Positions 49,593 through 52,500 of a DNA stretch of 64,000 nt are shown here, piece by piece. The notes beneath the pieces are model-generated. The model made no database searches. It saw nothing but the letters and a program-made list of their open reading frames with translations, and was not told the DNA's origin. Each line of letters opens with the position of its first letter. Positions within the stretch are counted from its first letter, which is position 1. The position numbers and the translations under genes are program-made. The stretch is taken from the NCBI GenBank assembly GCA_964057225.1, contig OZ059895.1:7068001-7132000 (forward strand), in the 5' to 3' direction. This DNA is from Auanema rhodensis. Lineage: Eukaryota; Animalia; Nematoda.

Positions 49593-52500
49593 TTATTTGC
49601 TTGGTTCCGAAAGATCCAATAGGTTCTCAATCCTGGCAACCGTTTTAGCAACATCGCTCACTTTATTGTCCGAATCTGCCCTACTGTCTCCATTGCATCC
49701 ATCGTCTTCACTAGTTTCTTCATCTTCATACTCTTCCTCGCTTTCATCTTCTTCCTCTTCATCGTCTTCATCGTCTTCTTCCTCGTCTTCATCGTCATCA
49801 TCATCGTCATCCTCTTCTTCATCTTCATCCTCTTCTTCCTCATCTTCGTCTTCGTCGTCTTCTTCATCTTCCTCTTCTTCCCAATTCAAAGTTTCTTCAG
49901 GGGCATTAGGATCTCTTCGAAGAGAAGGATCAGAGGAAATCTAAAAATAATTGATAGAACTTTAGTACTTTAATTTTCTCATATAGATATTTACATCTGG
50001 AAAGACAGGAAGTTCCTTATATTTGGTGCACTTTTGATTGAGGACGTGTGACAATGATCCAAGCTGAAACTGATCTCTTTCTTTAAAGCTGCTTTGAGGA
50101 GCAGGCGCTGGTTTCTTGTACATGAACATTTCTTCAGCATGTTCAGAAAGAACAGTAGTATTAAAGAGTAAATTTCTCAAAAATCGGCATCTATAAAAAA
50201 AAGAAAAAATCAATCTAGTAATTGAAAACTACATTTACCTGTCTCTAACATCATAACTTAAGTCGAAACGAGCCAGTTGGAGAACATACTGAACAAGCTT
50301 TTCACACTCTTCTCTATTTACCATCCATAGCTTGACGGCTAACTTCAAAGCTTCCAGCTATAATACACAGATAATTCCTATATACAAAGAAAAATTCAGA
50401 CCTTAACAATTTCATTTTCATTGGAGAAATTTTTGGCCAAAATGCGTAGAAAATCTGGAGCCATATGTCCCAACTACAAATCAGAATAAGGGACAATTTA
50501 AGTTTTGAGCTTACCTTTGATACATGTGTTGCCACCAACCAAACTACACAAGCTCTTGCAGCAGGAGCTTGTATGGTGTTTATTAAACGTACAAGTCTAG
50601 TAAGTAAAGGAAGAGGAGCATCAGCATGCAACAGCCTGAACGCAAAATTAATTAATTAGGAATTGGAATGTCTAGTTCACCTTTTTAAAACTACTACGGC
50701 ACAGCAAACGACATTTTCATTCGGTGATGCAATAAGTTGCACAAGTCCAGACATGCACTGTTCACTTACAGCGCCAACACGGACTGCACATCGTCCAATA
50801 GCCTCAACGGCTGGACCAGCCAGATCACTAATCGTCACATACGTCTGAAGCAAAGAAATGTAAGTATTATTATGTTTCATAGGCATACCTGAAGCTCTCT
50901 CAAAATAACGTGTACATTTGCTTCGGAAACCAAGCTTGTAAGTACATGAAGTTTTAACTCCCTCACGAATGAAGGATCCGATGACCGGACAAAAAATGAT
51001 TTCAGAAATGGATCAAACAAGCTCTAAAAAACACAATATTACGAATAAATATCAAACTATTAAACGATAGACGAAGATACAACAATTATACTTGTTGGTC
51101 CTCGCGTCTACAACAGTGAACCTCACAACCAAGATGAGGGTGGATGTCGAGTATGGCGTTTGAAGCAGAAAAAACAAACAATAGATAGAAATAATAAAGA
51201 AAAGTGACTAAGCATGCGCACAATTAACACACCACAACACGCTACTTGATTGATTGAAGAGATAGAACCGAAAGAATAGAAGAAAGCTACAAAAAGATTG
51301 AACGCTATCTCCGCCACCAAACCCCGAAGAGCACCAGCAAACGATACAAGTCTTTCATATATCACAAATAATCCAGTTAGTAAGACTTCTACTGTTAATT
51401 CGTATTAGTGGTTTCTGGGGCTGAGACAACACGAGTACTCCACACTCATCCTGGGATGCGGGCCCACTTTTGATATTGCGAAAGTGCCTGGTTGTACCGG
51501 GTTCCGTTCGCAAATTGTAGCCATATTCAGAAGAACGACGTACTGAACTTCACGAGGTCCTCGAAGAAGACGAACTAGAGCACGAGCAACCTAAAGGAGA
51601 TTATGATATTTTAAAAATTGAAACGATCCTCACTTGTGAAATTTGTGATTTTGGAGCAACGTGATAGAATAGCTGAGTTACAGACATCACAACACTACAG
51701 TTCCGAGACTAAACAAAGAATTAAGTTAAGTTTATTAATTAAGACGCAAAAATACTTGCAACAAAGGTCGAGCTGAACTAAGCAAAAGAGTTATATCAGG
51801 ATCTGGAGCATCACTATTATCAGGATTAGCTAACTCTGAGCGAGCATAACGAGTAAGTAATCCAATCATTATTACCTAAATATTATTTATATTCAGCAAT
51901 AGTACAGGTAAAAATAGACCTGTCCCCATTCATCTACATCTGCTAAAACCCGACACAATGCTCGATAATGTTTATGAATTAAATCAAATCTTGTTGGGCA
52001 AATCTGTAAGCTTAATTTATCAGGAACAATTTTATTATTGTATAACCTCTTCGAATGCATAAACGGCACTTCCAAGAACTAAACTTCGTCGGTCAGCAAG
52101 TAAGAAATCAATGCAATCAATAAGTTCATTTTCAAGATCAGGATCTAGAGAATACAATTTAGGAATTGCATGAGCAGCAACCTGAAAAGATTTAGAAATA
52201 ATATTAGCTACAGATAAATATTTACCTTCCTAACGTATGGACTCATATCTCTTACACAATCTTTAATAGCTAAAAGCATAATAGGAGAGATCATTCCTAC
52301 TCGAATTGAAGACAATACTCGTAAAGCACTGGCCCGAATCAGCTGATTATGATCCTAAAATTATTATAACTCATATAATAAAATTTTTTAAATTTTACTT
52401 TTAAAGCCTTTTGAAATGTAGAAATTGATAAAAGAGCTAAATCTTGTTGCTCTTCAGCATATCGTACTAAATAAACGTACACCAGCTTTTTGAGCTAAAG

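What the first reader, a model, noticed from the sequence alone, without database searches (positions are those of the whole stretch)
51024..51482. apb-3 intron folds back over its own 5' splice site (splice-site sequestration or ADAR editing-complementary sequence)
Seen: this intron is 444 nt while the other apb-3 introns are about 45 nt, and its donor is weak (AAA|GUGGGC). CAAAA|GUGGGCC-CGCA-UC-CCAGGAUGAGUGUGGA (51439-51472) pairs with UCCACCCUCAUCUUGG-U-UGUG-A-GGUUCAC-UGUUG (51111-51144), about 30 bp over 34 nt. It extends by UUCGC/GCGAG (51478-51482 with 51101-51105). Five non-Watson-Crick positions are G-U only on the sense strand, which points to selection on RNA rather than a DNA inverted repeat. 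The loop holds ACUAAC (51376-51381, STAR/ASD-2 type), GUGUUGUG (51233-51240, UNC-75 type) and GCAUG (51213-51217, RBFOX core). Retention gives [20 protein letters not shown] (premature stop). Inference: either regulated intron retention/NMD of AP-3 beta, or an exon-intron ADAR substrate like the GluA R/G site that could recode the Lys AAA codon beside the donor.
Basis: partly seen in the sequence, partly recalled or inferred. Interest (0 to 1): 0.75.

Follow-up and report, generated by a model that had tools for sequence, protein, structure and literature searches.

The report
RNA stem hides an alternative splice donor
In a roundworm gene for a vesicle-sorting protein (AP-3 beta), the one long intron folds back over its splice donor, and that donor is one of an ancient pair of alternative donors that add or omit ten amino acids, so the fold probably helps choose between two protein forms.

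Summary
The intron is 444 nt, while the other apb-3 introns are 37-47 nt. About 32 bp (4 G-U, no A-C) pair 51472-51437 with 51111-51147 and bury the donor GU. It is the strongest long-range duplex in the 64-kb window (0/1000 shuffles, 0/2824 real-sequence samples) and is much weaker on the antisense strand.

This donor (D2, AAA|GUGGGC) is the distal one of two in-frame donors 30 nt apart. The other is D1, CCG|GUACAA, G at 51497. The 10 codons between them ([10 protein letters not shown]) evolve as coding sequence. Public annotations of clade III, IV and V nematodes carry either the long or the short form, and a C. elegans study lists an apb-3 alternative 5' splice site as tissue-regulated.

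A helix over D2 recurs in C. briggsae and C. brenneri, where the two arms are the main conserved islands of the intron. It is weaker in C. auriculariae and in a metagenome relative. It is absent in trichostrongylids and unclear in Pristionchus.

Best reading: structural masking of D2 tunes the D1/D2 choice. Intron retention with NMD and ADAR recoding are not supported, though not excluded.

It is a new member of a known kind. The scan noted a similar architecture in an MSK kinase gene of this genome.

The parts
51498..51590 (-). Constitutive part of exon A of apb-3 (AP-3 beta trunk, ...[31 protein letters not shown])
   Evidence: Pfam Adaptin_N match to profile positions 267-297 ends exactly at this Pro; tblastn to strongylid APB-3
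51492..51500 (-). Proximal donor D1, CCG|GUACAA (G at 51497)
   Evidence: In frame with the acceptor. CCG|GUA is invariant at both synonymous sites in all 7 intron-bearing non-Pristionchus species but reads CCA GUG in intronless C. angaria. Short-form proteins are annotated in many nematodes.
51468..51497 (-). Alternative 30-nt segment, 10 codons [10 protein letters not shown], included when D2 is used
   Evidence: Variable columns by codon position are 2/3/9 among 7 species, Fisher p = 0.001. There is an in-frame 1-codon deletion in L004. It appears as a clean 10-residue insertion relative to human AP3B1, PDB 9c5c_B.
51462..51470 (-).
   Evidence: Ensemble probability that positions -3..+6 are paired is 0.88.
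51437..51472 (-). 5' arm of the core helix (last 5 exon nt plus the first 31 intron nt)
   Evidence: Pair list; MFE and centroid fold
51111..51147 (-). 3' arm of the core helix, ending 86 nt upstream of the acceptor
51124..51133 (-). CUUGGUUGUG, a UG-rich (CELF/UNC-75-like) element inside the 3' arm
   Evidence: Unique in the 64-kb window. The same 10-mer lies in the 3' arm of the C. briggsae and C. brenneri helices. As a bare sequence match it is not above chance.
51213..51245 (-). UG-rich tract (includes GUGUUGUG at 51240-51233) followed by GCAUG (51217-51213) in the looped-out part
   Evidence: GCAUG is present in all 7 non-Pristionchus orthologous introns, and a UG-rich tract lies upstream of UGCAUG in Haemonchus and Cooperia.
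51024..51467 (-). Intron as spliced from D2 (444 nt); from D1 it is 474 nt
   Evidence: Single copy in the 181-Mb genome. No Rfam family.
50889..51023 (-). Exon B ([17 protein letters not shown]...RELQ)
   Evidence: Pfam Adaptin_N profile positions 300-343

Best explanation
The helix is a functional pre-mRNA structure that occludes the distal donor (D2) of an ancient pair of tandem alternative 5' splice sites in apb-3. Using D2 inserts 10 residues ([10 protein letters not shown]) into a loop of the AP-3 beta trunk. Using D1, 30 nt upstream, gives a protein of the same length as human AP3B1 at this point. Both donors are weak. When the 3' arm, about 320 nt into the intron, pairs with the D2 region, U1 snRNP is kept off D2 and splicing is pushed to D1, which is less paired. 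When the helix is prevented or opened, D2 is used. That could happen if U1 binds before the 3' arm is transcribed, or if proteins bind the UG-rich element in the 3' arm or the GCAUG sites. What is shown: the helix and its statistics, the tandem in-frame donors, coding constraint on the 10 codons, constraint on D1, and recurrence of a D2-covering helix in Caenorhabditis. What is inferred: that the helix forms in vivo, the direction of its effect, and any role of CELF or RBFOX proteins.
For: Helix: arm -10..+25: z -4.25, 0/400; P paired 0.88, 2/30 shuffles reach it. Strand asymmetry.

Tandem donors. The D1 and D2 pair is present in 9 species of 4 families.

The 10 codons are translated: (third positions 9/10 variable against 5/20 for first and second positions, p = 0.001). 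There is an in-frame codon loss in L004. C. angaria lost the intron and kept the segment.

D1 is under selection: CCG|GUA is invariant in intron-bearing species and relaxed in C. angaria. The segment starts with Val (GUN) in clades III-V while the following residues vary freely.

Both forms are annotated, sometimes in the same species (C. brenneri, Necator). Koterniak et al. 2020 (PMC7706725), Suppl. Fig. [quoted passage not shown]

Recurrence of the helix: C. briggsae z -5.0 (0/400; 0/287 sliding controls); C. brenneri z -5.1; C. auriculariae has a 9-bp exact complement of D2 and P paired 0.90 (0/30); L004 z -2.3. In the C. briggsae/C. brenneri intron alignment the conserved islands are the two arms, a GAAAGCAUG block and the acceptor tract. 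RNAalifold recovers the helix with no broken pair. Fisher-combined p for relatives alone is 0.0027.
Against: No RNA data were available for the window species. The helix is absent in Haemonchus and Cooperia (z -0.5 and -0.6; D2 P paired 0.10 in Haemonchus) and inconsistent in Pristionchus. With real-sequence sliding controls, C. brenneri (70/727), C. auriculariae (89/442) and L004 (9/100) are not exceptional on energy alone. Cross-genus intron sequence similarity is at chance, so homology of the helices is unproven and no strict compensatory-pair statistic could be computed. The loop of about 290 nt is long, and sequestration over such distances may be outrun by co-transcriptional U1 binding (own knowledge: Eperon et al. 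1988). The paper's legend gives no coordinates, so identity of the C. elegans event with this site is inferred.
Confidence: 0.5

Rival explanations
1. Intron-bridging helix. The pairing loops out about 290 nt and brings the D2 end of the intron to within 40-90 nt of the acceptor, close to the usual nematode intron size. It would therefore help rather than hinder splicing of this unusually long intron, favouring D2.
For: The 3' arm ends 86 nt (window), 41 nt (C. briggsae), 47 nt (C. brenneri) and 37 nt (L004) from the acceptor. In C. auriculariae a second 13-bp helix continues the bridge toward the 3' end (read from the sequence). All other introns of the gene are 37-47 nt.
Against: The GU of D2 and its flanks are themselves base-paired in 6 of 7 species, unlike the yeast bridging boxes, which leave the 5' splice site free. 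Trichostrongylid introns of similar length lack the helix.
Confidence: 0.18
2. The inverted repeat has no function. It would be a by-product of an old inverted duplication or chance complementarity that happens to include the donor. The Caenorhabditis helix would then be an unrelated element.
For: Absent in trichostrongylids. Cross-genus similarity is at chance. Large genomes hold many such repeats, and the C. brenneri and C. auriculariae loci contain stronger duplexes elsewhere.
Against: The defects are G-U and never A-C. The sense strand is favoured by 10-14 kcal/mol in four species. The arms are the conserved islands between C. briggsae and C. brenneri, whose introns are otherwise unalignable. 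The intron is single copy and not a repeat family.
Confidence: 0.12
3. Regulated intron retention coupled to nonsense-mediated decay. The helix blocks splicing altogether and the retained intron brings a premature stop, lowering AP-3 beta output.
For: Retention gives a stop after 20 codons in the window species, after 2 codons in C. briggsae and C. brenneri, and after 1 codon in Pristionchus. Both donors are weak.
Against: D1 lies outside the significant part of the helix (P paired 0.53, no different from shuffles) and remains available. The only published event type for apb-3 found here is alternative 5' splice-site choice, not retention.
Confidence: 0.1
4. ADAR substrate. The intronic arm acts as an editing-complementary sequence for adenosines in the AAAA run just before D2. 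Editing would either recode Lys or turn AAA|GU into AAI|GU, which reads as AAG|GU and is a stronger donor.
For: An exon-intron duplex of about 32 bp covers the AAAA run. A deaminase-domain gene is present in the genome. AAA is invariant in all species examined.
Against: No dsRNA-binding domain was confirmed next to the deaminase gene. Synonymous sites of the exonic arm vary freely. Only about 5 exon nucleotides are in the significant helix. From my own knowledge, conserved recoding editing is not established in nematodes.
Confidence: 0.05

Closest known systems
hnRNP A1 exon 7B / CE6 duplex (own knowledge: Blanchette and Chabot 1997)
   Same: A conserved intronic element downstream base-pairs with the 5' splice-site region of an alternative donor and lowers its use in favour of another donor.
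   Different: There the choice is between donors of different exons in a mammal. Here two tandem donors sit 30 nt apart in one exon of a nematode gene whose other introns are about 45 nt. No experiment has been done.
MAPT exon 10 and SMN2 exon 7 (TSL2) 5' splice-site stem-loops (own knowledge)
   Same: An RNA helix includes the GU of a weak donor and limits U1 access. Isoform ratio depends on helix stability.
   Different: Those are local hairpins of a few base pairs. This is a long-range helix of about 32 bp closing a loop of about 290 nt.
Yeast RPS17B (RP51B) intron complementary boxes (own knowledge: Libri, Charpentier, Rosbash; Rogic 2008)
   Same: Long-range intron pairing shortens the effective distance between the two ends of a long intron in a genome of short introns.
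   Different: The yeast boxes leave the 5' splice site single-stranded and enhance splicing. Here the GU is paired.
GluA2 R/G exon-intron hairpin (ADAR editing-complementary sequence; own knowledge)
   Same: An exon end plus 5' splice site is paired with an intronic complement.
   Different: There is no evidence of editing, the exonic synonymous sites are not frozen, and the loop is hundreds of nt rather than a tight hairpin.
C. elegans tissue-regulated alternative splicing with UNC-75/CELF and FOX-1/ASD-1 motifs (PMC7706725, PMC3627589)
   Same: apb-3 is listed there as a tissue-regulated alternative 5' splice-site event. UG-rich and GCAUG motifs occur in the orthologous introns.
   Different: No RNA structure is described for apb-3 in the papers searched. 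Motif function here is untested.

Membership tests
Structure-occluded alternative 5' splice site (hnRNP A1 7B/CE6, MAPT exon 10 type) | Two competing donors that both yield an open reading frame and are both used | tested here: met
   D1 and D2 are in frame in 9 species. Long and short proteins are annotated across clades III-V, twice within one species. The segment is under coding constraint and D1 under synonymous constraint. A C. elegans alternative 5' splice-site event is reported. There is no direct RNA evidence for the window species.
Structure-occluded alternative 5' splice site (hnRNP A1 7B/CE6, MAPT exon 10 type) | A stable helix that includes the GU of one donor | tested here: met
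   G51467-C51116 and U51466-A51117 lie inside a 32-bp helix. It is in the MFE and centroid folds. P paired is 0.88. No shuffle reaches its energy (0/1000; 0/400), and neither does any of 2824 real-sequence samples.
Structure-occluded alternative 5' splice site (hnRNP A1 7B/CE6, MAPT exon 10 type) | The helix is kept in evolution (conserved arms or covariation) | tested here: inconclusive
   Kept in C. briggsae and C. brenneri. Suggestive in C. auriculariae and L004. Absent in Haemonchus and Cooperia. Homology across genera is unproven. Relatives alone give a combined p of 0.0027.
Structure-occluded alternative 5' splice site (hnRNP A1 7B/CE6, MAPT exon 10 type) | Disruptive and compensatory mutations shift the donor ratio | not testable with these tools
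   Needs a reporter or genome edit.
ADAR exon-intron editing site with intronic ECS (GluA2 R/G type) | Exon-intron duplex covering exonic adenosines | tested here: met
   A51468, A51470 and A51471 are paired.
ADAR exon-intron editing site with intronic ECS (GluA2 R/G type) | The genome encodes an ADAR (deaminase domain plus dsRNA-binding domain) | tested here: inconclusive
   A_deamin exons lie at G000:C7:15772258-15772908. No dsrm hit was found nearby. A candidate upstream ORF has no Pfam match.
ADAR exon-intron editing site with intronic ECS (GluA2 R/G type) | Exonic arm frozen at synonymous sites | tested here: not met
   The Gly, Thr, Ala, Ile and Ser third positions all vary among species.
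ADAR exon-intron editing site with intronic ECS (GluA2 R/G type) | A-to-G differences between RNA and DNA | not testable with these tools
   No transcript data are held.
Regulated intron retention coupled to NMD | The retained intron introduces a premature stop | tested here: met
Regulated intron retention coupled to NMD | Retained transcripts exist and are stabilised when NMD is blocked | not testable with these tools
   No transcript data are held.
Intron-bridging complementary boxes (yeast RPS17B type) | The helix loops out most of the intron and brings its ends together | tested here: met
   The 3' arm ends 86, 41, 47 and 37 nt from the acceptor in the window species, C. briggsae, C. brenneri and L004.
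Intron-bridging complementary boxes (yeast RPS17B type) | The 5' splice site itself stays single-stranded | tested here: not met
   The GU is paired in 6 of 7 species.

The most novel reading that the evidence does not exclude
The helix is one instance of a general nematode device: tandem alternative donors placed next to an unusually long intron whose long-range stem acts as a co-transcriptional timer on the distal donor. The stem would be opened in particular tissues by CELF/UNC-75-type and RBFOX-type proteins binding inside or beside its arms. In apb-3 it would yield a tissue-specific (possibly neuronal) AP-3 beta from a single gene, doing by splicing what vertebrates do with the AP3B1/AP3B2 gene pair. 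The event would have been kept since the common ancestor of clades III, IV and V. A second case of the same architecture was noted in an MSK kinase gene of this genome (s1-419870, not tested here).
Probability: 0.2. Interest if true: 0.72.

Novelty: new member of a known kind. Interest (0 to 1): 0.55.

Why it matters
AP-3 sorts cargo to lysosome-related organelles and synaptic vesicles. Vertebrates have a ubiquitous and a neuronal beta-3 gene, whereas nematodes have one.

A 10-residue loop insertion has been switched by two donors and kept across at least three major nematode clades. That marks a functionally distinct AP-3 beta isoform that has had little attention.

The long-range helix gives a concrete hypothesis for how the choice is set, and it is easy to test in C. 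elegans. It would add a conserved example of RNA-structure control of splicing in nematodes, where I found none described in the papers searched.

It also has a practical consequence. Public gene models disagree at this site in many nematode genomes, including parasites, because both junctions are plausible.

Tried and rejected
- **Embedded ncRNA:** an Rfam scan of the intron found no family.
- **Transposon or MITE origin:** the arms and the whole intron are single copy in the 181-Mb genome.
- **Recent inverted duplication that includes the exon:** pairing beyond the core helix into the exon is at chance level, and a helix at the same place exists in Caenorhabditis.
rejected, because the 10 codons show a coding signature and C. 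angaria keeps them without the intron.
- **A switch in which the 3' arm pairs alternatively with the D1 flank (ACAACCAGG):** present in the window species only, and weak (z -1.7).
- **Cross-genus intron alignment, to get formal covariation:** scores are at shuffle level, including the shared 10-mer.
- **More relatives:** two metagenome pattern scans and one genome-contig scan found nothing. Two protein look-ups had no record. One Logan contig had no DNA.
- **Annotation-based control set of other long introns:** my exon mapper resolved too few introns, so I replaced it with annotation-free sliding controls.
- **UACUAAC as a conserved element:** not found in any relative.
- **Spliced gene model:** All searches used single exons by reference or database proteins.
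Full report
**What is in the window.** The gene lies on the minus strand and encodes the AP-3 beta subunit (Adaptin_N). 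Synteny with Pristionchus and C. angaria is conserved: a TAF5-like WD40 gene lies upstream. The intron is 444 nt. Every other intron I could map in the gene is 37-47 nt. The genome has 181 Mb in 112 contigs and the intron is single copy in it. Rfam finds nothing in the intron.

**The helix.** The antisense strand does not (z +0.39).
- A pair-by-pair listing gives a core of 32 pairs between 51472-51437 and 51111-51147.
- The core has four G-U pairs, all with G in the 5' arm, and no A-C mismatch. It also has one A.G mismatch, one U.C mismatch and three small bulges or loops.
- The donor G and U pair with C51116 and A51117.
- Duplex energy for a 65-nt arm is -58.1 kcal/mol against -38.2 +/- 3.7 for 1000 dinucleotide shuffles, and none reach it.
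- Among 2824 real-sequence samples taken every 45 nt on both strands of the window, the only one that comes close is this locus itself.
- The same two arms give -46.4 on the sense strand and -32.9 on the antisense strand.

- The Pfam match of exon A stops at residue 31 (profile position 297), and exon B resumes at profile position 300. The last ten codons of exon A are therefore an insertion relative to the family profile.
- They begin with GUA. CCG|GUACAA (G at 51497) is a second donor, in frame with the same acceptor.
- The pair D1/D2 is present, 30 nt apart (27 nt in three species), in the orthologous gene of eight other species. These are a metagenome relative (L004), Cooperia (L003, identified through a table in PMC13097308), Haemonchus, C. 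briggsae, C. brenneri, C. auriculariae, P. pacificus and P. fissidentatus.
- Public protein models split into long and short forms in clades III, IV and V. Twice, both forms are annotated in the same species (C. brenneri, Necator).
- Against human AP3B1 (PDB 9c5c chain B) the long form shows a clean 10-residue insertion, and the short form has the human length.

**Both donors carry signs of use.**
- Among seven species the ten codons vary at 2, 3 and 9 columns for codon positions 1, 2 and 3 (Fisher p = 0.001).
- L004 has lost exactly one codon.
- C. angaria has lost the intron and kept the ten codons. The long form is therefore translated.
- Conversely, the two synonymous sites at D1 (CCG and GUA) are invariant in all intron-bearing non-Pristionchus species, while four other fourfold-degenerate sites in the segment vary. 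In intronless C. angaria those two sites read CCA GUG.
- Across clades III-V the segment nearly always starts with Val, while the next residues are free.
- Koterniak et al. [quoted passage not shown] Fig. S3B legend). The legend gives no coordinates, so that it is this same site is my inference.

**Is the helix kept in relatives?** I used one pre-set arm (D2 -10..+25) against the rest of the intron and compared with dinucleotide shuffles.

| Species | Result |
|---|---|
| Window species | z -4.25 (0/400) |
| C. briggsae | z -5.0 (0/400) |
| C. brenneri | z -5.1 (0/400) |
| L004 | z -2.3 (13/400) |
| C. auriculariae | z -1.6; with a shorter arm z -2.6 (6/400), owing to a 9-bp exact complement of D2 |
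| Haemonchus, Cooperia | not significant |
| P. pacificus, P. fissidentatus | not significant |

- In whole-intron ensemble folds, D2 is paired with probability 0.88, 0.82, 0.88 and 0.90 in the window species and the three Caenorhabditis species. Only 0-2 of 30 shuffles reach these values. The probability is only 0.10 in Haemonchus.
- Combining lineages by Fisher's method gives p = 0.0001, or p = 0.0027 when the window species is left out to avoid ascertainment bias.
- The C. briggsae/C. brenneri intron alignment is essentially random except for four islands: D2 plus 12 nt, a GAAAGCAUG block, the 3' arm (a 20-nt perfect block) and the acceptor tract. RNAalifold recovers the helix with no broken pair and three one-sided changes that keep pairing.
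- In four species the sense strand is favoured by 7-14 kcal/mol.

**Cautions.**
- With sliding real-sequence controls, only C. briggsae is exceptional on energy alone (0/287). C. brenneri (70/727), C. auriculariae (89/442) and L004 (9/100) are not.
- Cross-genus intron similarity is at shuffle level.
- The 10-mer CUUGGUUGUG lies in the 3' arm in the window species, C. briggsae and C. brenneri, and is unique in the window. As a bare sequence match it is not significant, so I claim recurrence of a structure, not proven homology.

**Mechanism.** The best-supported reading is that the helix masks D2 and so shifts splicing toward D1, which lies outside the significant pairing (P paired 0.53, like the shuffles).
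- Opening or pre-empting the helix would favour D2 and the long isoform.
- GCAUG occurs in every non-Pristionchus orthologous intron, and UG-rich tracts occur in most. In Caenorhabditis and the window species a UG-rich element is part of the 3' arm. This makes protein-gated opening plausible, but it is untested.

The rivals are:
- a bridging role that helps the long intron splice. The arm positions fit, but the GU itself is paired;
- a functionless repeat;
- retention with NMD. A stop follows on retention, but D1 remains available;
- ADAR editing. The duplex and a deaminase gene exist, but no dsRNA-binding domain was confirmed, the exonic synonymous sites are not frozen, and only about 5 exon nucleotides are in the significant helix.

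**Comparison and novelty.** The closest known systems are structure-occluded donors such as hnRNP A1 exon 7B/CE6 and MAPT exon 10. This would be a new, deeply conserved member of that kind in nematodes. The apb-3 alternative donor event itself is on record for C. elegans. In the papers searched I found no description of its depth of conservation or of an RNA helix. Another agent of this scan reported the same architecture in an MSK kinase gene of this genome: neighbouring donors conserved in clade V plus a long structured intron (s1-419870). I did not test that.

Noticed in passing
L012:1779-1808 (C. angaria): C. angaria has lost this intron precisely and keeps the ten alternative codons (VEEGTFAISK) as constitutive exon. 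Both synonymous sites of the former D1 have changed (CCA GUG).
   Followed up: partly
L005:2006-2025 (P. pacificus) and L006:5507-5526 (P. fissidentatus): In Pristionchus the proximal donor D1 sits in a local 7-bp hairpin (GGGUAGA, 6-nt loop, UCUACCC). P. fissidentatus keeps it with one U-A to U-G change. This is the opposite donor to the one masked in the window species.
   Followed up: partly
L014:2145-2165 with about 2280-2300 (C. auriculariae): Directly after the D2-complementary element, a second 13-bp long-range helix (GGAUGCGCGGCAA with UUGCCGUGCAUCC, one G-U) bridges toward the 3' end of the intron.
   Followed up: no
L003 (GCA_036418165.1, contig MU931933.1): The 343-aa protein model P0003 on this Cooperia contig is fragmentary and partly reads through introns. 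It still carries the long-form junction, identical to Haemonchus.
   Followed up: no
Proteins P0171/P0160 (C. brenneri), P0165/P0155 (Necator): Public gene models of the same species disagree at this junction: one uses D2 and the other D1. More generally, nematode AP-3 beta annotations are inconsistent here.
   Followed up: yes
I did not examine it.
   Followed up: no
window 49593-49889 (-): A long Asp/Glu-rich ORF stretch in apb-3 corresponds to the acidic hinge of AP-3 beta. It aligns poorly with relatives (32% identity).
   Followed up: no
G000:C7:15772258-15772908 (-): A gene with an adenosine-deaminase (A_deamin) domain, either ADAR- or ADAT1-like. No dsRNA-binding domain was detected beside it with the quick scans used.
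   Followed up: partly
L013:3400-3480 (C. brenneri intron): The looped-out part of the C. brenneri intron holds short repeated units (variants of GAAACGTCG and CGTTTCG, direct and inverted) that are absent in C. briggsae. The C. brenneri locus also contains much stronger duplexes elsewhere (minimum -61 kcal/mol).
   Followed up: no
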